IMG/VR virus record: IMGVR_UViG_3300025121_000282
Coordinates: 62,001 to 126,000 of that record
Strand: one strand, 5' to 3'
DNA length: 64,000 nt
Part shown: positions 12,753-51,064 of the stretch, piece by piece
Layout of the letters: every line of letters starts with the position of its first letter
Numbering within the stretch: position 1 is the stretch's first letter
Position numbers and translations under genes: made by a program
The notes under the pieces: model-generated
Told to the model about the DNA's origin: nothing
Database searches by the model: none
The model's input: only the letters and a program-made list of their open reading frames with translations

Positions 12753-13781
12753 TTGATGGAAAAAATTAGCCACTCAGAACGCACTCTTGGCATTGTGTAT
12801 GGGACGGCTGTTTTCGATGCAATAGGAAAACAGGTCGAAGGGGTGAAGAATATAACTACACCCGTCACCGGTTACGGCCCGTACCAGGGTTCTTATGACC
12901 AACTAAAAAACTTGGCGCCAAATGAGTGGACAGATGATACCATACTCACTATAGCCACTGCTCTGGGGCTGGTTCGGGCTGGTTTCATGTCTATTGGATA
13001 TCAAACCAACGAATTAATCAGGGCATACAACAGGTACCCTGACAAAGGAATGGGTACTAGTACCAAGTTATCCATTCAGAAACTGGAAAAGGGAGTTGAG
13101 TGGGACCAAGCAGCTAAAGCAGGTGGTGGCACGGGTGTAGGCAACGGGGTGTGTATGAAAACTGCCATTATTGCTGCCTGGGCAACACGGGGTGACAGTT
13201 GTTTAGACCTGAAAACTGTGCTGGATTTTACTGAAAAAGTCGGTAGACTTACCCACCACGACCCTAGAGGCTATTTGCCCGGGGTGTATATGACTTGGTT
13301 AACTTATAAGTTAATGACGGGGTGCGAGGGCTCAAACAAACTTATACTAACACATGGCACCTATCCGGACAGATTGTTTAGAGAGCTAGTAGAATTTGCT
13401 TCAAACCAAGATAACATACACTACAGGGCTTCTAGTTTATCAGACTCTGTACACCTAAAGCTCCAGCTGGCCTACGACCTACCCGAACAAACAACAATAT
13501 TTGAAGCAGCCAGGATTCTGGGTACCAGTTGTTATGCCCCAGAGTCATTCTCATTTGTAATTTGGTGCTTCTTTCGGCATGTTCTGAACAGTACCAATCC
13601 TACACAGGCTATCCTAGATGCCATCAACTGCGGTGGCGACACAGACAGTGTAGGAGCTATGCTGGGAGCACTATACGGAGCATACGCAGGGCGTGCATGG
13701 ATACCTGCTGAGTTCCGTAATAAAGTGCACCGGACCAAACACTTATACTCTGTTGCTATACAGGTTTCTACTGCTCCTTAA
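12753..13781 (+). CDS. ADP-ribosylglycohydrolase (DraG/ARH family)
   Basis: FDAIG, WTDDT, GNGVCMK, THH and GGDTDSVGAMLGALYGA motifs. Confidence 0.9.
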   Translation: MMEKISHSERTLGIVYGTAVFDAIGKQVEGVKNITTPVTGYGPYQGSYDQLKNLAPNEWTDDTILTIATALGLVRAGFMSIGYQTNELIRAYNRYPDKGMGTSTKLSIQKLEKGVEWDQAAKAGGGTGVGNGVCMKTAIIAAWATRGDSCLDLKTVLDFTEKVGRLTHHDPRGYLPGVYMTWLTYKLMTGCEGSNKLILTHGTYPDRLFRELVEFASNQDNIHYRASSLSDSVHLKLQLAYDLPEQTTIFEAARILGTSCYAPESFSFVIWCFFRHVLNSTNPTQAILDAINCGGDTDSVGAMLGALYGAYAGRAWIPAEFRNKVHRTKHLYSVAIQVSTAP

Positions 13782-16024: not shown

Positions 16025-17146
16025 TTACTCGGCAGCAGCGTCATCCCCAGTATCCGGGGTGGGCTCGGAGGCGATGATCTGCTCGATGTCCTCGCCACGA
16101 GCCACCCGGGCAAACACCTCGAAAGCGTTCCGGCGAACCTTGGCCGACACATTCCAGTGATTGGCAATGAACCGGGTGTCCTCATCACGACCGTACTGGT
16201 GGGTCAGGTAGTAAGTGACACCGTTGTAAAGGCCCCACGCCGTACCCTCAGCAGTCTCGTGACCGGGGGACGTGCTCGTCAGTTCCATGACCGCGTCCCG
16301 CCACTCCGTGGCTTTGGCAGCAGAACCACCACCAGCGGGGTCAGGACGGAGGAAATTGAGAAGCAGCTTGGCATTCTCTTCCGTGACGGGCGTCGCCGCC
16401 ATGGCTTGGTACACCTCCACCACGTTGTCGAACCGCTGGTGAATCTTCACCACATGCTCCGACAGGAACTTAAGGGCCTCTCGCATCTTCCGGGTGTGGG
16501 GAATACCGATGTTCCGCTCGGAATTCTCCTTCAGCGCGGCATTCAGCGTGTTCTGACACACCACCCGAGTGCCGGTGGGCTTGAAGAACACGCTGGACGA
16601 GCCGTCGTGGGCCGTGCCAAGAAGAAGGTAAAGCTCCACCTCATCACCGGGGACCACCAGTTTGGTGCTGTTCACCACCTTCGCCATGATGCACACCCGG
16701 CGCCCATCCTGGAGGGCGATGGCCGTCTCATACCGGATCAGCCCGGCCTCGACCGCAGGCTCGAAGAAGGCGAAGGCCTCTTCGTTTTGGAGGACCTCGT
16801 AGCGGCTGGTGACCGGGCCCCAAAGGGGGTGGGAATAGCTAGGTCCTTCGTGGACCGCCATCCCATCCTCTGCCTCATTGGCTTCTTCGTCCGCCTGCGC
16901 CGGGTCGATTTCGTCCGTACGCATGACCCAATACTTGTCGTCGGCAGGAAGGAAGGACACCTCGCCATCAGCATTCATGACGTTGGCACCGGCCTGGATC
17001 TTGGTCAGACCCCACCCGCCCAACCGAGAGGCCTGCATCATCCGTGCGCCATCAGTGCACTCCTCATCGGTGAGAGGCACGCCCTTACCATGCCACGGGA
17101 CACCACCAGAAATCGCATAGGCCATAGTCTTGACTGCGTCAGCCAT
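16025..17146 (-). CDS. DUF932 family phage/plasmid-like protein (TIGR03299-like)
   Basis: PWHGKG, YEVLQNEEAFAFF, ETAIALQDGRRV, AHDGSS, RVVCQNTL, GTAWGLYNGVT; likely ATG at 17146; GC-rich. Confidence 0.85.
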   Translation of the reverse strand: MADAVKTMAYAISGGVPWHGKGVPLTDEECTDGARMMQASRLGGWGLTKIQAGANVMNADGEVSFLPADDKYWVMRTDEIDPAQADEEANEAEDGMAVHEGPSYSHPLWGPVTSRYEVLQNEEAFAFFEPAVEAGLIRYETAIALQDGRRVCIMAKVVNSTKLVVPGDEVELYLLLGTAHDGSSSVFFKPTGTRVVCQNTLNAALKENSERNIGIPHTRKMREALKFLSEHVVKIHQRFDNVVEVYQAMAATPVTEENAKLLLNFLRPDPAGGGSAAKATEWRDAVMELTSTSPGHETAEGTAWGLYNGVTYYLTHQYGRDEDTRFIANHWNVSAKVRRNAFEVFARVARGEDIEQIIASEPTPDTGDDAAAE

Positions 17147-17241
17147 TTTTGAGTTCCTCCTTGTTTTTAATTGCTGTCTCTTCCTGGGTCCTTCATCCAC
17201 AGAGAGACAGAGTCAATCCTGTATTTGTATAATTTTCAGTT

Positions 17242-30168: not shown

Positions 30169-31590
30169 TTGAAAGCAAGAAGCACTATTCCCGAATCTTC
30201 AACTAATCCTGGCAAACTCCAGGCACTCAGTAATCTGTATCAGGAATATTTGAAGTACATGGAAGTTTGTGTGGGGTTGATGATTAAAGACAAGGTATTT
30301 AGTCTAAAGCCCTCAGAAAGAATGTTGTACTTTCCAAATTCCAGCACATTGACTGTGAATATAAAAGCCAGTTGTCAAATGCAGTCAATACAACTGGTTA
30401 ACAGTTGGGTAGCTGGTGTTTATGTTAGAATTTTAAGGAAGTATATCGGAAAGCAAAAATTTATTGATTCAGAAGCTAAACAACTTTATACGATCGGAAA
30501 ATATCGTCTTACTCATGGTGGTAAATTTGGAAATGCTGAGGTTTCCCAAAAATTAGTTGACCTTTATTGGTCTTGGGTTTGGAATCCCGAAATTGTGGGC
30601 AATCCTCCAAGAATCACTTACAAAATCCCAATGAGGATGACAGAGCACACGGTTGTTGTTGAACCACCAAAAAACACCGTTCATTTTAATGGTTTGTGGT
30701 TAAAGTTTTCTTCCCTGGTTTCAAAACAGCGGATTTCAATTCCCCTCAAAGTCACACCACACCTCCATCGGTTTGTTGGTTTGGCAAACATTGCTCTTAC
30801 AGTTTATGTCAGAAAGACGCGCATTGGGTGGCAGTTTCTCTTTACTGACAAATCTGAGGAACCCACTTTTGATGGTTCAGTGGGTAAGGTTGGAATAGAC
30901 GTTGGTTTAAATACTTTAGCTGCTACCAGCAGTGGAGAACTACATGGGTATAAATTTAAAAAGAAATTTGAGTATTTAAAAAAGAGGGTACAAGACGCAA
31001 GAGCAAATCGCCAAAGACAGGGTTTAAAGGATGACTCTTTAAAACTTTGGAAACTAGAACAACGCTTAAGTGGTCAGATCAAAACGGCTGTTGGTTCCAT
31101 TGCTAATAAACTTGTCAAGAAATATAAAGACCACACATTTGTCGTTGAAGATCTTGACCTCTCAGGATGTAAGGGTTCAAAGCGTTTTGCCTACAAAGCT
31201 CTTCAAAGCTCTTTAGCCCGAAAGGCTGTGATCGAGAAAATAAATCCGGCCTACACTTCTCAACAATGTCCAAGTTGCGGGTGCATTGATAAAAATAACA
31301 GAAACGGGATAAAATTTTCTTGTAAATCATGTGGTCGAAAAGCTCATGCCGATTTTGTTGGCGGGTTCAATATTCTCAGACGTTCTGAGAATAAAAATAT
31401 TGGGCTGAAAACGTCACCAAAAGAAGCAAAGGTAATTTTGAGAGAGCGATACCTTAGAAATAGGAACAGTTCCTCAAAACTCCCTGGTCGTAAGACCAAA
31501 ATAAAGCGCGCTTGTACGGACAAGCCAGAGACTCACTACGGAGAAATGCCGCAAAGTCTCAAATCAGGCTCAACTGAAAAGTTAACCTGA
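30169..31590 (+). mobile_element. tnpB: TnpB (IS200/IS605/IS607-family RNA-guided nuclease), no transposase in window
   Basis: RuvC-I GIDVG, RuvC-II VEDL, NPAYTSQQCPSCG...CKSCG, RuvC-III HAD; antisense to neighbours. Confidence 0.88.
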
Positions 31591-37686: not shown

Positions 37687-37769
37687 TGGAGCCGGGTGTG
37701 GGATTCGAACCCACGGTGTGGGATTCCGCCTTACAAGGGCGGTGCCGTCGACCGCTTGGCTAACCCGGC
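37687..37769 (-). tRNA. trnT: tRNA-Thr(UGU) with expanded variable region
   Basis: G1-C72/C2-G71, loop CU-UGU-AA, U73, CCA; 11-nt variable region. Confidence 0.85.
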
Positions 37770-37794
37770 AGAAACACAATTGTACATGGCAATT

Positions 37795-37965
37795 GGAAAT
37801 GCTGATTTTGAAGGCCCCAGGACTTCCACCTGGACACCACTTTTGATCGTGGCTGCTAGCGCAGACTCTAGAATCTGCGGCCAGTGTTGGGCACCGCTTA
37901 ATGACCACTTGGCGGGGCACAGAGCACCGGTCTTACAATAGGCCTTCAAAATCAGCACTTCTCCA
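37795..37965 (-). ncRNA. candidate multibranch ncRNA (~170 nt)
   Basis: 16-bp perfect stem 37801-37816/37941-37956 enclosing several hairpins. Confidence 0.5.
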
Positions 37966-37998
37966 GTGCCCAGGCGTTACAAAGTGTCCGTACTTTCC

Positions 37999-38519
37999 GG
38001 ACTGTCACCCCTTCCTCAAGCAAGCTGCCTTGTAGGTGCATACTTGAGAATTTGGTCAGGCCCAGAGTTGGAACCTGTGACTCAAACAGCTAGCTAGGCC
38101 GTTAAAGTCAAGTACCCAATGGCGAAGCACATGCCATCAGGAGGGTGTGGAACCTGCTGTGCTAACAGGGCAGAGAACCGGGTCTGCGGACCGGTTCACA
38201 ATAGCCACTCATTTGAGCCTTAGGCTTTCGCCACGTAGTCCTGCCGGAAAGTCTCATGGGAAATGGCATCCCACTTTTCATCGTAGGTTGAAGTCCACGG
38301 CTTTGTCTTCCGATGCACCTTTTAGTGCTGAGGGCGGGTGACTCCCTTTCGGTCGTAAAAACCGAATCTTGCCAACACCAACATGGTTATTGCAACCCGC
38401 CCGAACACCCCATGCGGGGCTCAAATGCAGGGTGCTCTGCTATCAACCACTAAGCAGATTCCTGTGAGCGGAGTAGGCCTTTTAGTTGCCTAGTCCCGGC
38501 TTTTATACGGGACAGTCCC
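37999..38519 (-). ncRNA. candidate large structured ncRNA (~520 nt)
   Basis: Terminal gggactgtc/gacagtccc pairing, about ten short internal hairpins, no credible ORF. Confidence 0.5.
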
Positions 38520-38527
38520 TAGGGGAA

Positions 38528-38992
38528 CTAAACCTTTGCAGTTCTGGCGCGCTTGAAACCTAGCAGGCTGATTTGATTGATCCTGGCCTTGTAAAGCACG
38601 CCACCACTCTCGCCACGAGCTTCCAGGAAAGCAATACCGGTGGCGACACTTTCAATCAGGGCATCCAATTCTATGTTCGATAAATGATCAGCCCGGTCAA
38701 ACCTTTCCCAGGCTTTTTTGACGCTTTGATTGCTGATCATCTGCTTGGGGTTGGACACCTCAGCACGAATCAAATCATTGGTTTCCATAGTTCTTGTGTC
38801 ATTGCAATGTGAGAAGGCGTCTATTCGCTCCCTCAAGATCTCGCTGTACGCAGTCATATGGGTTATTTGGAGTACAATCCGCGCCCGTTCGTGTTCCTTG
38901 AGTTTGGAGAATATTTCATCGTTGATGAGAAAGGACAACTTGGCGATCCTTTTGTCTAGTTGTTCCTTCTCGTCCAAAATCTTCTCTATCAT
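38528..38992 (-). CDS. crAss001_48-like N-terminal domain fused to a repeated phage domain
   Basis: EKEQLDKRIAKL...QITHMTAYSEILRERI; C-terminal half similar to 40361-40582. Confidence 0.6.
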   Translation of the reverse strand: MIEKILDEKEQLDKRIAKLSFLINDEIFSKLKEHERARIVLQITHMTAYSEILRERIDAFSHCNDTRTMETNDLIRAEVSNPKQMISNQSVKKAWERFDRADHLSNIELDALIESVATGIAFLEARGESGGVLYKARINQISLLGFKRARTAKV

Positions 38993-39536: not shown

Positions 39537-40062
39537 ATGAAACTCACTAATTGTACTAACTGTGGTGACTCCACCACAAATCCAAGATTTTGTTCTAACT
39601 CGTGTTCGGCATCATGGGGCAACAAACTAAAGCCCCCATGTCCCAATGAAGAAGAAATGTAAACGTTGTGAAGTTATTATTCCCAGCAGAATAACTTATT
39701 GCACCAAATGTCAAGACCACTTTAAATCAAATACTAAGCGATGGAAAAACGAAACACTGGGTACACTACAGGCACGCCGAGTGTATCAGTCCAACTCACA
39801 AATTCGAGATGATGCTCGTGTGGTAGTGGACAAGCAGGGGTGGGTCAAATGCTGTGCGGTGTGTGAGTACTCTTTACACGTGCAAGTGTGTCACGTTAAA
39901 GCCATCAAAGACCACACGCCAGACACTATTATCTCGGCGATAAATGACCCATCCAACCTGATTTTGTTGTGTTCCAACCACCACTGGGAATTTGACCATG
40001 GCCTCTTGGACATTAAAGAAATTCGTGCTAGGCAGGGATCGAACCTGCGACCACTCGCTTAG
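39537..40062 (+). pseudogene. HNH endonuclease with N-terminal Zn finger, frameshifted at a C5 run (~39633)
   Basis: MKLTNCTNCG...FCSNSCS in one frame, then KKKCKRC...HVQVCH...NLILLCSNHHWEFD; 3' end overlaps tRNA-Arg. Confidence 0.75.
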
Positions 40063-40311
40063 CTTACCACTATAACTTTCGTTACTCTCTTGTGGAGATT
40101 TGTGGCCTGGACTTTGTCTTCACCCGTTCTGGGTGGCCCCCGTCAAGTCTCTACACCTTTTCCCGTTTAATAGGGAACTTGGCTCGGCGTTGTCTCGCTT
40201 CTTTTGAAGGAAGCAGGGAGTTCACCGAATTTGAGGGCATTCACACTAGACATTCCTATCTAGGTGCTCCTATTTCAAAGGCGAGCGCTCTATCCGCTGA
40301 GCTACTAGCAC
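40024..40311 (-). tRNA. trnR: tRNA-Arg(UCU), interrupted by group I intron
   Basis: Exons 40278-40311 and 40024-40062 give loop CU-UCU-AA; A20, G73; no CCA. Confidence 0.9.
40063..40277 (-). ncRNA. group I intron (IC3-like), 215 nt, in tRNA-Arg(UCU) after U34
   Basis: Same P/Q/R/S blocks as the Leu intron; terminal G; covarying P3. Confidence 0.9.
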
Positions 40312-40360
40312 ACAAAATCAATTTGAAAATAGTTACTAGGGAACAAAAGAAAGTTGAGTG

Positions 40361-40582: not shown

Positions 40583-40772
40583 ACCTCAGCCATAACTGGT
40601 CTAATTCTGGTGTGGTTTCCATTCTCTGCTCCAAGAATTGAAAAATGGGCTACAAGTGAGTTGACGGTGATGTGACTATCGACCATCGAGCCGCGGCCTT
40701 ACCACAAGTAGGCCACACCGTGGGGACCGGGAGGCTTATACCTGCTTGTAACCCAAACTTTGATGAAAATTG

Positions 40773-40853: not shown

Positions 40854-41507
40854 CTATGTTTGAAGAATCTTGTCCCAACGCTCTGCTGCGTCTGGGGAAA
40901 TGGTTATTGCGTTCTTATACAAAGATGTTTCTTGCCAAGACCAAATATAACATGTGTCTGTGTACAAATCGTATGCAATAATAAAATCGAATTCATGGGA
41001 TTGGTATCTTTTACCCGGTTGTATCAGCTTGGTTTTGGCTAGAACTCTTGGGGCATGGATCAATCTAATAGCTGGCTGACCATGTCCCTTGTCTGACCTA
41101 GCAGTTTTAACTTGTACTTTCCATAGCTTATTAGTTTGGGGTAGGAACATTATTATGTCCACAGTGGCACAATCAAACACTGACTTGTATGTCTCAATAC
41201 CTCTAGCCAAAGCCCGCGCCATAACTGCACACTCTGACAAGCTTCCAATGTCACGACTAGTTAATTTAGCTCGGTCGATCGATTGGTGGAGCCAAGATTC
41301 CGTCCCACGTTCTTTTTTATTGCTGATTGTATGTGGGATGTGTTTGCTTTTTATCTCAGTTTCAGTGAGTGGGTGGTCTCTCAATAGTGCACTAAGTGCT
41401 CCCTTGGAAACCCCAGTCAGGCCCCTAATCTCATTAAGGGACCTACGTTCATCAGTCCTAAGACGCAGGCACTCGGCTCTAAGACTCTCATCTAAACGTG
41501 TAGCCAT
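40854..41507 (-). CDS. free-standing PD-(D/E)XK endonuclease (I-Ssp6803I/PDDEXK_5-like) with N-terminal HTH
   Basis: GSLSECAVMARAL...VDII...KVQVKT; N-terminal RSLNEIRGLTGVSKGALSALL. Confidence 0.75.
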   Translation of the reverse strand: MATRLDESLRAECLRLRTDERRSLNEIRGLTGVSKGALSALLRDHPLTETEIKSKHIPHTISNKKERGTESWLHQSIDRAKLTSRDIGSLSECAVMARALARGIETYKSVFDCATVDIIMFLPQTNKLWKVQVKTARSDKGHGQPAIRLIHAPRVLAKTKLIQPGKRYQSHEFDFIIAYDLYTDTCYIWSWQETSLYKNAITISPDAAERWDKILQT

Positions 41508-49094: not shown

Positions 49095-49593
49095 ACTCCA
49101 CCGTAATTTTTATAGTCTTCTCACCGGGCAATTTTATTCTTGTAATGTGCTTGTCTACATGTTCGGTACCCAAGCCGCCAGCGCCCCAATGAGAACCTAC
49201 TGCGCCAATTTCGGGTCCGTATGAGTGTGGTGGCACCAAATAGGCAGCTTGGCACATTATGTTGGAAGCCAGATAGTGTGTTAATGGTCTATCCGAGTCC
49301 CGTTTTGCAGCGGTGTTCCACTCTTCAAATGACCTACCGACAATCTTCTGAACTTCCTGGTCATTGGGGTTTAGCCTAGAAATATCAGTTGTTACCCTGT
49401 GCAAAGAGACACTTCCACCCTCTTTTGGTGGTGTTGGAAAGTCCTTGCTCAGTTCAACGGATTTTGTGTCCCAGTTATAAACAACCCAAAATGTTAACTG
49501 TCTCTCTTGCATTTGTACCACCTCTATACCATTATACAGAGGATTCTTTTTTATGTGTCGGAAGGGATATAAAAAATTTGGACCCCCTGTCAA
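49087..49593 (-). CDS. hypothetical protein
   Basis: 168 aa ORF; start uncertain. Confidence 0.5.
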   Translation of the reverse strand: MTGGPNFLYPFRHIKKNPLYNGIEVVQMQERQLTFWVVYNWDTKSVELSKDFPTPPKEGGSVSLHRVTTDISRLNPNDQEVQKIVGRSFEEWNTAAKRDSDRPLTHYLASNIMCQAAYLVPPHSYGPEIGAVGSHWGAGGLGTEHVDKHITRIKLPGEKTIKITVEYE

Positions 49594-51064
49594 CTTCTGA
49601 TTCCAATCTTATGGTGCCACCAAGTCTCTCTATTATCATTTTGGTCAAGTACAGCCCAACACCAGTACCTGGAAATTCTGTGGTCAGTCTCTCAAATAAC
49701 AAAAACAACTTTTTGTGATACACAGGGTCTATGCCCACCCCGTTATCTTCTACTACCACAACAGGTGCAAAACTTTGTGGGTCGGCGATGACATGTATTT
49801 TTACCATTTTTACAATACTTTTGTTAAATTTGAGACCGTTATCTATGAGATTGTTGAAGGCCTCTGTTAAAAGTGTTTGATCTCCCAACACCATAGGAAG
49901 GTCTGAACTTATTTTTATGTAACAATCTGAGGCTTCTCTACAGTACGCCAGCCTCATAGGCCTGAGTATGGTGTTCAGGTCTACTGGAAGCGCCTTCATA
50001 TTTTTTAATTTTCGTATGTCAGACACCTTGTGGAGACCATCTATTATGTCGGATAGCAGTACTGCATCTTGTTTTATGTCCGTAATGTACTCTTGCATCC
50101 CATCTGGAAGTTTAAAGTCTTCCTCTATTATCTGCGCAGCACCCAAGATGCTGCGAGGCGGACTTCTTAATTGGTGTGCTGCCACATTAGCAAAACCAGA
50201 TAAAGCAACATTCGCCTGTTCTAGCTCGTGTATGGTGTTTTTTAGGTGTTCTTGTTGTTTGACAAACTCAGTCAGGTTCGTTGCGCTCATGTACATACCC
50301 CCGGATTGGCGGTCCCGGGTTATACTCCACAATAAGTGTACCCTGTTACCATTGGCTGTTCGTGTTTTTGCTTTTGCTCTTGTTATTTTTGTAAAACTGT
50401 CCACCTCCTCTTCCTCAAATTCTTCCTCAAATTCTTCCTCAAATTCTATCCATTCTTTCCACGGTCTACTTGTCAATTCTAGTTCTGACCGCCCCAATAG
50501 CTGTTGGAGGCCCTTACTTACAAAAGACCATTTCTCAAGATCAGTGGGTCGAGTCGTGGCAACCAACTCTAGCCCCACTAATAACCAGTACTTGAGGTCT
50601 ATGTCCCTTTTGTGGTGTTCGCTTATATCCCTTGCTGTAGCATATACCTGAGTTCCATCAGACGCAGCCGTCCATTCCAGGTATACTTCTGCCTTGTCTT
50701 TTCGTATGTATCTGTTTACAAATCCCATCGTGTGGTGGTCTATATTTTGTAGCGCAACAGCTTCTTTTATAGTCTTCTCTCTGTCTTGTGGGTGTACAAA
50801 GTTAATAAGTGGTTTTGACTTGAGTTCCTCTAATGAGTACCCAATAGTTTTAACCCACCCTTTAGACAAAAATGTGAACACACCATTTGAGACGGTGCAA
50901 TGCAAATCACTAGAACTGTTAAACCATTTGTCCAGTAGTTCTTTTTGATTTTTGTACTCTAAAGATTTTTTGTAATATTCTGTTTTTTTAAGCCAAAAAA
51001 GAAAATACGGTAATACCAACAAAAATAGCAACACCCAGTCATGGAACTCTAATTCTTGAATCAT
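49532..51064 (-). CDS. membrane-anchored PAS-domain sensor histidine kinase
   Basis: TM helix, PAS (LGYSLEEL...VHPQDRE), H-box AAHQLRSP, N-box NLIDNGLKF, DNGVGI, GTGVGL. Confidence 0.9.
   Translation of the reverse strand: MIQELEFHDWVLLFLLVLPYFLFWLKKTEYYKKSLEYKNQKELLDKWFNSSSDLHCTVSNGVFTFLSKGWVKTIGYSLEELKSKPLINFVHPQDREKTIKEAVALQNIDHHTMGFVNRYIRKDKAEVYLEWTAASDGTQVYATARDISEHHKRDIDLKYWLLVGLELVATTRPTDLEKWSFVSKGLQQLLGRSELELTSRPWKEWIEFEEEFEEEFEEEEVDSFTKITRAKAKTRTANGNRVHLLWSITRDRQSGGMYMSATNLTEFVKQQEHLKNTIHELEQANVALSGFANVAAHQLRSPPRSILGAAQIIEEDFKLPDGMQEYITDIKQDAVLLSDIIDGLHKVSDIRKLKNMKALPVDLNTILRPMRLAYCREASDCYIKISSDLPMVLGDQTLLTEAFNNLIDNGLKFNKSIVKMVKIHVIADPQSFAPVVVVEDNGVGIDPVYHKKLFLLFERLTTEFPGTGVGLYLTKMIIERLGGTIRLESEVDRGSKFFISLPTHKKESSV
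50409..50446. repeat. 12-bp tandem repeat (about 3 copies) encoding EFEE in the kinase linker
   Basis: (tcttcctcaaat)n gives EFEEEFEEEFEEEE. Confidence 0.8.

What the first reader, a model, noticed from the sequence alone, without database searches (positions are those of the whole stretch)
37999..38519. Candidate ~520-nt ornate ncRNA upstream of tRNA-Thr
This ORF-poor, GC-balanced stretch is closed by gggactgtc/gacagtccc. On the - strand it contains many stems: gtcccg/cgggac, tctgct/agcaga, gggcggg/cccgccc, tcggt/accga, gcac/gtgc, tggga/tccca, ggc-GAAA-gcc, aaccgg/ccggtt, atggc/gccat, ctcaagt/gcttgag. Large ornate RNAs such as GOLLD and ROOL are known from phage tRNA regions. I could not match this sequence to either from memory, so it may be a new class.
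Basis: partly seen in the sequence, partly recalled or inferred. Interest (0 to 1): 0.75.

Follow-up and report, generated by a model that had tools for sequence, protein, structure and literature searches.

The report
New large structured phage RNA
A 314-kb groundwater phage carries, inside its tRNA gene cluster, a discrete non-coding RNA of about 545 bases that is conserved and keeps its folds in a sister phage. It matches no known RNA family, so it is a candidate new relative-in-kind of the enigmatic giant phage RNAs ROOL and GOLLD.

Summary
Window 37985-38527 (minus strand, 543 nt) is a discrete non-coding unit in a 314,886-bp huge phage from groundwater.

- **Homologue:** one lineage was found, in Logan contigs L104 and L105. 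It is 80.6% identical at aligned sites, against 59% at four-fold sites of the flanking genes. Homology starts and stops sharply while both flanks differ.
- **Not coding:** all frames carry stops, indels are mostly not multiples of three, and substitutions show no 3-base periodicity.
- **Folded RNA:** twenty local helices (114 pairs) pair in 99.7% of cells. Ten pairs changed on both sides and 13 changed on one side through G-U wobble; one cell is broken. The 12-19 G-U pairs mark the minus strand as the folded one. The consensus fold has z = -6.2.
- **No known family:** nothing in Rfam 15 matches, including ROOL and GOLLD tested directly.
- **No wider distribution found:** nothing turned up in 29 related huge-phage records or in pattern scans of three collections.
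- **tRNA adjacency:** in the sister phage the RNA abuts tRNA-Leu. Here a 200-nt window-specific structured module separates it from tRNA-Thr.

It is most likely a new family of large phage tRNA-island RNA. Its global fold, its expression and its function remain untested.

The parts
37985..38527 (-). Conserved non-coding RNA unit (543 nt; 563 nt in L104:708-1270)
   Evidence: It is 80.6% identical to L104 over 541 aligned sites, against 59% at four-fold sites of flanking genes. Homology has sharp boundaries. No Rfam match.
38474..38513 (-). Two adjacent 5' hairpins (GUCCCG/CGGGAC and UAGGC/GCCUA). They lie in a 41-nt invariant block that begins with the palindrome CCCUAGGG.
   Evidence: Predicted independently in both species. 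The stems are invariant; the second loop varies.
38436..38458 (-). Hairpin UCUGCU/AGCAGA (CUCCGCU/AGUGGAG in L104)
   Evidence: After a one-base realignment, one U-A pair becomes C-G and one G-C becomes G-U (read). The invariant CUCCGCU just upstream can pair with the same 3' strand, so two alternative pairings exist.
38395..38435 (-). Variable region holding an 11-nt indel and a CCCC/GGGG hairpin
Evidence: This is the least conserved part. The inner hairpin is kept with one C-G to U-A change.
38204..38347 (-). Most conserved core (about 105 nt with 8 changes). It contains the GCACU/GGUGC hairpin and a three-way junction at 38204-38267 with a GAAA tetraloop.
   Evidence: The junction has 3 pairs changed on both sides, plus one pair seen as U-A, U-G and C-G in the three sequences.
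38153..38197 (-). Hairpins GAACCGG/CCGGUUC and CCUGUU/AGCAGG
   Evidence: The first has 2 pairs changed on both sides and 3 wobble changes. The second is invariant.
37986..38141 (-). 3' domain of five hairpins. Hairpin 38078-38110 has an invariant loop CUAGCUA that is self-complementary over 6 nt.
   Evidence: 41 pairs are 100% paired in both species. 3 double and 8 single changes all keep pairing; slid controls pair in 27-45% of cells.
37780..37982 (-). Window-specific structured module ('domain C'): a 21-bp perfect stem enclosing four hairpins. It is not part of the conserved unit.
   Evidence: z = -5.12. It is absent from L104 and L105, where tRNA-Leu(CAA) takes this place.
37687..37769 (-). 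tRNA-Thr(UGU), the next gene downstream on the same strand
   Evidence: ARAGORN and Rfam, 60.5 bits.
38528..38992 (-). Upstream gene of 154 aa with an N-terminal crAss001_48-like domain. Its stop codon lies directly against the 5' end of the RNA.
   Evidence: Pfam PF21825, E = 3.8e-13. The homologue P0122 in L104 led to the sister locus.

Best explanation
Window 38527 to 37985 (minus strand) is a gene for a discrete, stable, highly folded non-coding RNA of about 545 nt. It belongs to a family not yet described.

**Shown**
- It is under purifying selection.
- It is not protein-coding.
- Its local helices are maintained by compensatory and wobble substitutions that fit only the minus-strand RNA.
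- It sits in the phage's tRNA island in the same orientation as the tRNAs.

**Inferred**
- It is transcribed together with the neighbouring genes and tRNAs, since no promoter or terminator is evident.
- Its 3' end is released when RNase P cuts the 5' end of the tRNA that follows. That tRNA lies directly after it in the sister phage. In this phage a 21-bp duplex module, a plausible RNase III target, comes first.
- It then acts in trans as a compact RNA-only architecture during infection, as proposed for ROOL and GOLLD. It may self-associate through its invariant self-complementary loop.
For: - **Conservation:** 80.6% identity over 541 aligned sites, against 59% at 218 four-fold sites of flanking genes (binomial p about 2e-26). 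There are invariant blocks of 40 nt.
- **Sharp boundaries:** homology ends abruptly while both flanks differ. L104 has an extra ORF upstream and tRNA-Leu downstream.
- **Non-coding:** every frame has stops. Stop-free frames change between species. Indels are 11, 1, 5, 1, 5, 1, 1 and 1 nt. There is no 3-periodicity and no Pfam hit.
- **Structure:** 114 curated pairs are 99.7% paired, with 10 double changes, against 0-3 double changes and 31-49% paired in slid controls.
- **Consensus fold:** z = -6.2 sense and -4.9 antisense; SCI 0.73 against 0.65 for shuffled alignments.
- **Strand:** 12-19 G-U pairs fit only the minus strand.
- **tRNA adjacency:** kept in both phages although the tRNA identity differs.
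- **Possible expression:** RNA-type libraries hold a few conserved 31-mers.
- **Literature:** ROOL and GOLLD share the size class and the phage/tRNA-island context.
Against: - Only two species (three sequences) are known, so covariation has little statistical power and the curated helices were chosen with both sequences in view.
- Single-sequence MFE structures transfer poorly: only about 47% of the variable pairs stay paired.
- The long-range architecture differs between predictions.
- No transcript evidence was examined, and the RNA libraries may contain DNA.
- No homologue was found in 29 related huge-phage records or in collection scans. The family may therefore be very narrow.
- Trans action and multimerisation are pure inference.
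Confidence: 0.6

Rival explanations
1. It is a cis-acting structured leader or spacer of the tRNA/mRNA precursor. It would guide processing or stabilise the transcript and have no function after release.
For: It lies between a protein gene and a tRNA with no promoter or terminator of its own. It abuts tRNA-Leu with a spacer of about 12 nt in L104.
Against: About 545 nt with 40-nt invariant blocks and at least 20 maintained helices is far more than known tRNA leaders need. The unit is kept intact while the flanking gene and tRNA are swapped, which argues for an autonomous module.
Confidence: 0.2
2. It is a decayed or highly divergent self-splicing intron or other mobile ribozyme left in a tRNA island rich in homing endonucleases.
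For: HNH and PD-(D/E)XK endonuclease genes lie within 3 kb. L104 has an HNH gene between its tRNAs. The tRNA content around the unit is fluid.
Against: There is no match to group I or group II models at E<=10. It interrupts no gene, since the flanking tRNAs are intact. The genome encodes no reverse transcriptase. Strong purifying selection argues against a relic.
Confidence: 0.07
3. It is a DNA-level element such as a replication origin, packaging site or regulatory region, whose inverted repeats act in DNA.
For: It is a conserved non-coding stretch with many inverted repeats.
Against: 12-19 G-U pairs and 13 wobble-type substitutions would be A-C mismatches on the other strand or in cruciform DNA. 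Cumulative GC skew shows no inflection here. There are no iterons or direct repeats.
Confidence: 0.03
4. It encodes one or more small proteins.
For: Stop-free stretches of up to 86 codons exist.
Against: The frames are broken differently in the sister phage. Most indels are not multiples of three. Substitutions show no codon periodicity. There are no homologues in 5.8 billion proteins and no Pfam hit.
Confidence: 0.02

Closest known systems
ROOL RNA (Rfam RF03087)
   Same: The size class matches (ROOL averages 581 nt; this RNA is 543-563 nt). Both are encoded by phages or prophages, often beside tRNA genes and possibly co-transcribed with them. Both have many hairpins and multistem junctions and no associated protein.
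   Different: The ROOL covariance model finds nothing at E<=10. The host environment differs (a groundwater huge phage, against rumen and Lactobacillales). ROOL's six junctions and three pseudoknots could not be recognised.
GOLLD RNA (Rfam RF02032)
   Same: A large ornate RNA of phages and prophages next to tRNA islands. A tRNA can sit in or beside it. A conserved part is joined to a variable part.
   Different: There is no match to the GOLLD model. GOLLD RNAs are often longer than 800 nt. The sequence and helices are unrelated.
Other large bacterial RNAs in Rfam (OLE, raiA, HEARO/IscB omega RNA, RNase P RNA, tmRNA, group I/II introns, YrlA)
   Same: Long, multi-helix, conserved non-coding RNAs.
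   Different: None matches. The best hit is 11.7 bits to HEARO on the wrong strand, against a gathering score of 83. The genome has no reverse transcriptase and no Ro60. The window's TnpB gene is 7 kb away on the other strand.

Membership tests
ROOL (RF03087) | Scores at or above the gathering score (99.1 bits) of the Rfam covariance model | tested here: not met
   No match at E<=10 in the whole genome, in the 591-nt region or in the homologue.
ROOL (RF03087) | About 580 nt, encoded in phage or prophage near tRNA genes | tested here: met
   543-563 nt, in the tRNA island of a huge phage.
ROOL (RF03087) | [quoted passage not shown] | tested here: inconclusive
   Long-range helices cannot be fixed with two species, and predictions disagree.
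GOLLD (RF02032) | Scores at or above the gathering score (150 bits) of the Rfam model of the conserved 3' region | tested here: not met
   No match at E<=10 in the genome or the window.
GOLLD (RF02032) | Many members exceed 800 nt | tested here: not met
   The conserved unit is 543-563 nt. It reaches about 750 nt only if the non-conserved domain C is counted.
Group I / group II introns | Match to the intron models; interrupts a gene; group II needs a reverse transcriptase or domain V | tested here: not met
   No Rfam match. group-II-D1D4-1 scores only 10 bits elsewhere in the genome. There is no RT, and the flanking tRNAs are intact.
Bacterial Y RNA (YrlA) with Ro60 | A Ro60 (TROVE) gene in the genome and a match to the YrlA model | tested here: not met
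   No TROVE domain and no Rfam match.
Protein-coding gene | Conserved open frame, codon periodicity of substitutions, homologues | tested here: not met
Structured ncRNA (generic) | Helices maintained by compensatory substitutions in homologues | tested here: met
   10 double and 13 single pair-preserving changes in 114 pairs, with one broken cell. Only two species are available, so power is limited.
Structured ncRNA (generic) | Detected as a discrete transcript | not testable with these tools

The most novel reading that the evidence does not exclude
This is a third, unrelated class of giant phage RNA that, like ROOL and GOLLD, assembles without protein into a homo-oligomeric particle. Assembly would use its invariant self-complementary loop (CUAGCUA) and the 5' palindrome. 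It would be made by huge phages from their tRNA islands to handle tRNAs or ribosomes during infection.
Probability: 0.12. Interest if true: 0.85.

Novelty: new variant of a known kind. Interest (0 to 1): 0.62.

Why it matters
Large, intricately folded RNAs without protein partners are very rare in bacteria and phages. Two of them, ROOL and GOLLD, also sit beside phage tRNA islands. They were recently shown to form RNA-only nanocages whose function is unknown.

An independent family in the same genomic niche, in an unrelated lineage of huge groundwater phages, would show that the link between a tRNA island and a giant RNA has arisen repeatedly. It would also give a new, compact subject of about 545 nt for structural and functional work on what these RNAs do.

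Tried and rejected
**Searches for homologues that found nothing**
- BLAST of the RNA against GenBank phages.
- BLAST against 29 IMG/VR records related by TerL. A covariance model of the 3' domain found only the RNA itself in the same records.
- Exact-pattern scans of viral contigs, three patterns.
- A scan of JGI metagenomes returned the phage's own genome plus three chance hits in GC-rich bacterial DNA.
- A scan of GTDB genomes returned one chance hit inside a coding region.
- Using spurious ORFs over the RNA as a handle in the protein databases gave nothing or only the query itself.
- Single-protein searches for close relatives through the flanking genes and the DNA polymerase found none.

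**Alternative readings tested**
- Stop-codon recoding was considered because the genome carries a tRNA(CUA). No recoding restores coding density preferentially. Frame +1 of the region has 7 TAG codons, but it reads as low-complexity nonsense on the wrong strand.
- Retron, DGR and group II intron readings: the genome has no RT.
- Y RNA: the genome has no Ro60.
- Domain C as a disrupted tRNA-Leu: it shows no convincing similarity to the L104 tRNA-Leu.

**Steps that failed or misfired**
- I first used a wrong Rfam accession for GOLLD from memory. RF01998 is group-II-D1D4-1. This was corrected to RF02032.
- Strain variants in runs X9 and X11 gave only two SNPs in the RNA, both at unpaired positions, so they are uninformative.

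Full report
**Where the window lies**

The window is bases 62001-126000 of a 314,886-bp virus record judged complete. It was assembled from groundwater metagenomes. The genome has a terminase with an intein, a family-A-like DNA polymerase and 8 tRNA genes.

Its closest terminase relatives anywhere are only about 40-53% identical, so the lineage is sparsely sampled. The finding lies in a tRNA island on the minus strand:
- tRNA-Val at 40846-40772;
- several small genes, including HNH and PD-(D/E)XK endonucleases;
- a 154-aa gene with a crAss001_48-like domain at 38992-38528;
- the candidate RNA;
- tRNA-Thr(UGU) at 37769-37687.

**Checking the observation**

The closing repeat is 8 bp (37999-38006 with 38511-38518), not 9.

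The region has no ORF above 64 aa, and every frame has 8-14 stops over 37770-38530. The genome has many gaps without long ORFs, so ORF poverty alone says little.

Folding is better than chance:

| Stretch | z-score |
|---|---|
| 37770-38530, minus strand | -6.26 |
| 37770-38530, plus strand | -3.54 |
| Conserved unit alone | -4.08 |
| Homologue L104:708-1270 | -3.68 |

The region is single-copy in the genome.

**Known families**

Rfam 15 (4227 models) gives only tRNAs at gathering score. It gives nothing in the region at E<=10, even when only 591 nt are searched with the laxest filters. The one exception is an 11.7-bit HEARO match on the wrong strand.

The homologue is equally blank. ROOL (RF03087) and GOLLD (RF02032), run directly on the genome, find nothing at E<=10. 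The genome has no reverse transcriptase and no Ro60.

**A homologue**

The upstream protein has one relative among 5.8 billion proteins (P0122). It is encoded on three Logan contigs (L104-L106).

L104:708-1270 and L105:1590-2152 align with window 38527-37985. Identity is 80.6% at 541 aligned sites. Four-fold degenerate sites of six flanking orthologous genes are only 59% identical (n = 218), and those genes are 76% identical overall. The region therefore evolves well below the neutral rate (binomial p about 2e-26).

Conservation comes in blocks, with invariant runs of 40, 41 and 26 nt separated by variable stems.

Homology starts abruptly at UUCCCCUAGGG and ends at ...GUACGGACA, while both flanks differ:
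- L104 has an extra 300 nt with an ORF upstream.
- Downstream in L104, about 12 nt after the last hairpin, lies tRNA-Leu(CAA), then an HNH gene, then tRNA-Thr.
- In the window the unit is instead followed by a 200-nt module, then tRNA-Thr.
- That module (37780-37982) has a 21-bp perfect stem and four hairpins, z = -5.12. It has no counterpart in L104.

The RNA is thus an autonomous module whose neighbours are exchangeable. It stays inside a tRNA island and in tRNA orientation.

**Not coding**

- The longest stop-free frame of the window (86 codons, plus strand) is split over three frames in L104.
- Indels are 11, 1, 5, 1, 5, 1, 1 and 1 nt.
- Substitutions show no 3-base periodicity (32/45/28, p = 0.10).
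- The translations have no homologues and no Pfam match.
- Recoding of a stop codon was considered because the genome has a tRNA(CUA), but it is not supported.

**Structure**

The 3' domain was tested on its own alignment (A4). Five hairpins with 41 pairs are paired in 100% of cells in both species. Three pairs changed on both sides and eight changed on one side, and all stayed paired. Partners slid by 1-3 columns pair in only 27-45% of cells and show no double changes.

Over the whole unit I curated 20 local helices with 114 pairs:
- 99.7% of cells are paired.
- 10 pairs changed on both sides and 13 changed through wobble. One cell is broken.
- Slid controls give 31-49% paired cells and 0-3 double changes.
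- One pair runs U-A, U-G, C-G across the three sequences.
- The three-way junction at 38204-38267, with its conserved GAAA loop on a covarying stem, carries three double changes.

The helices contain 12 (window) to 19 (L104) G-U pairs. These would be A-C mismatches on the other strand. With the stronger sense z-scores (alifold z = -6.2 against -4.9; SCI 0.73 against 0.65 for shuffled alignments), this makes the minus strand the RNA.

Caveats:
- The curated helices were chosen with both sequences in view.
- An unbiased transfer of each single-sequence MFE structure keeps only about 47% of the variable pairs.
- The long-range architecture is unresolved. The default consensus has a 5' domain closed by UCCCCU/AGGGGA and a GUCACCC/GGGUGAC helix closing the rest. 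That is the MFE of L104 but costs the window sequence 13 kcal/mol. Another scoring scheme gives different long-range pairs.
- An enumeration of all co-pairable helices shows only about a two-fold excess of covarying ones over shuffled alignments.

**Distribution**

Nothing further was found:
- GenBank phages;
- 29 terminase-related huge-phage records, by BLAST and by a covariance model of the 3' domain;
- three exact-pattern scans of IMG/VR;
- one scan of JGI metagenomes, which returned the phage's own genome and three chance hits;
- one scan of GTDB genomes, which returned a chance hit;
- protein-database searches with spurious ORFs.

Near-identical strains in four studies differ at two unpaired positions of the RNA.

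**Expression**

No promoter or terminator stands out, so co-transcription with the neighbouring genes and tRNAs is the simplest reading.

A search for RNA runs found three RNA-type libraries that hold 2-3 of 48 sampled 31-mers: one sediment metatranscriptome and two wastewater RNA-Seq cDNA libraries. That share fits the invariant blocks of an L104-like relative. These may be the very runs the three Logan contigs came from. I could not verify this or lay the reads, and such libraries can contain DNA.

**Interpretation**

The evidence establishes a conserved, non-coding, structured RNA module of about 545 nt in the tRNA island of a huge phage, unrelated by model search to any Rfam family.

By size, complexity and genomic niche, its nearest analogues are ROOL (average 581 nt) and GOLLD. 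Both are phage or prophage RNAs near tRNA islands, possibly co-transcribed with tRNAs, and both were recently shown to form RNA-only nanocages of unknown function. The similarity is one of kind, not of membership, because the defining models do not match.

I infer that the RNA is cut out of a polycistronic precursor. RNase P would act at the following tRNA. In this phage RNase III may act at the 21-bp duplex. The RNA would then act as a folded, free-standing molecule.

The invariant 7-nt loop CUAGCUA (6 nt self-complementary) and the 5' palindrome CCCUAGGG are candidate self-association sites. Palindromes of this length are expected by chance at about this frequency, so this is only a lead.

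The main rival is a purely cis-acting processing or stability element of the tRNA precursor. A decayed mobile intron, a DNA-level element and small-protein coding are each disfavoured by specific tests.

Noticed in passing
window 37780-37982 (-): A 200-nt module between the conserved RNA and tRNA-Thr. It has a 21-bp perfect stem enclosing four hairpins, z = -5.1. It is absent from the sister phage, where tRNA-Leu(CAA) sits instead, and it matches nothing in Rfam. It may be an RNase III processing site or a separate small RNA.
   Followed up: partly
window 40645-40755 (-): A second conserved non-coding element directly 3' of tRNA-Val, 88% identical to L105:636-755 and L106:302-421. An 11-bp closing stem encloses three hairpins and is followed by a U-run. 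All five substitutions at paired sites keep pairing through G-U. No Rfam match.
   Followed up: partly
window 40023-40312 (-): ARAGORN in intron mode calls an 84-nt tRNA(UUG) with a long variable arm, split by a 206-nt insert at position 39/40. Good acceptor, D and T arms lie at the two ends. It may be a disrupted or intron-bearing tRNA or a false call. It overlaps the end of the plus-strand HNH gene.
   Followed up: partly
window 39646-40062 (+), 40854-41507 (-); L104:1367-2137: HNH and PD-(D/E)XK endonuclease genes lie among the tRNAs. The sister contig has an HNH gene and a fragment resembling a tRNA 5' half between tRNA-Leu and tRNA-Thr. The tRNA island looks like a hot spot for homing endonucleases.
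   Followed up: no
window 37693-37778: In run X9 a minor variant (depth 2.9 against 11) replaces tRNA-Thr with 76 other letters, and its flanks are about 90% identical. This suggests a third lineage with a different tRNA at this position.
   Followed up: no
window 30169-31590 (+): A TnpB/Cas12f-like gene (OrfB_IS605 plus TNB domain) in the phage genome. Its own guide RNA would lie at its 3' end, and it is unrelated to the finding.
   Followed up: no
genome 284600-284674 (outside the window): A tRNA with anticodon CUA (amber suppressor; ARAGORN labels it Pyl). ORF coverage gives no sign that TAG, TGA or TAA is recoded.
   Followed up: partly
genome 24999-28199 (L003:4999-8199, outside the window): The large terminase subunit carries an intein with a LAGLIDADG-type endonuclease, as do most of its relatives in other huge phages.
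   Followed up: no
window 49532-51064 (-), 12753-13781 (+), 16025-17200 (-): The phage encodes a PAS/HisKA/HATPase sensor histidine kinase, an ADP-ribosylglycohydrolase and a DUF932 protein.
   Followed up: no
genome 191298-191385 (L009): ARAGORN's tRNA-Leu(CAG) was not reported by the Rfam tRNA model at gathering score. It may be a poor or false tRNA.
   Followed up: no
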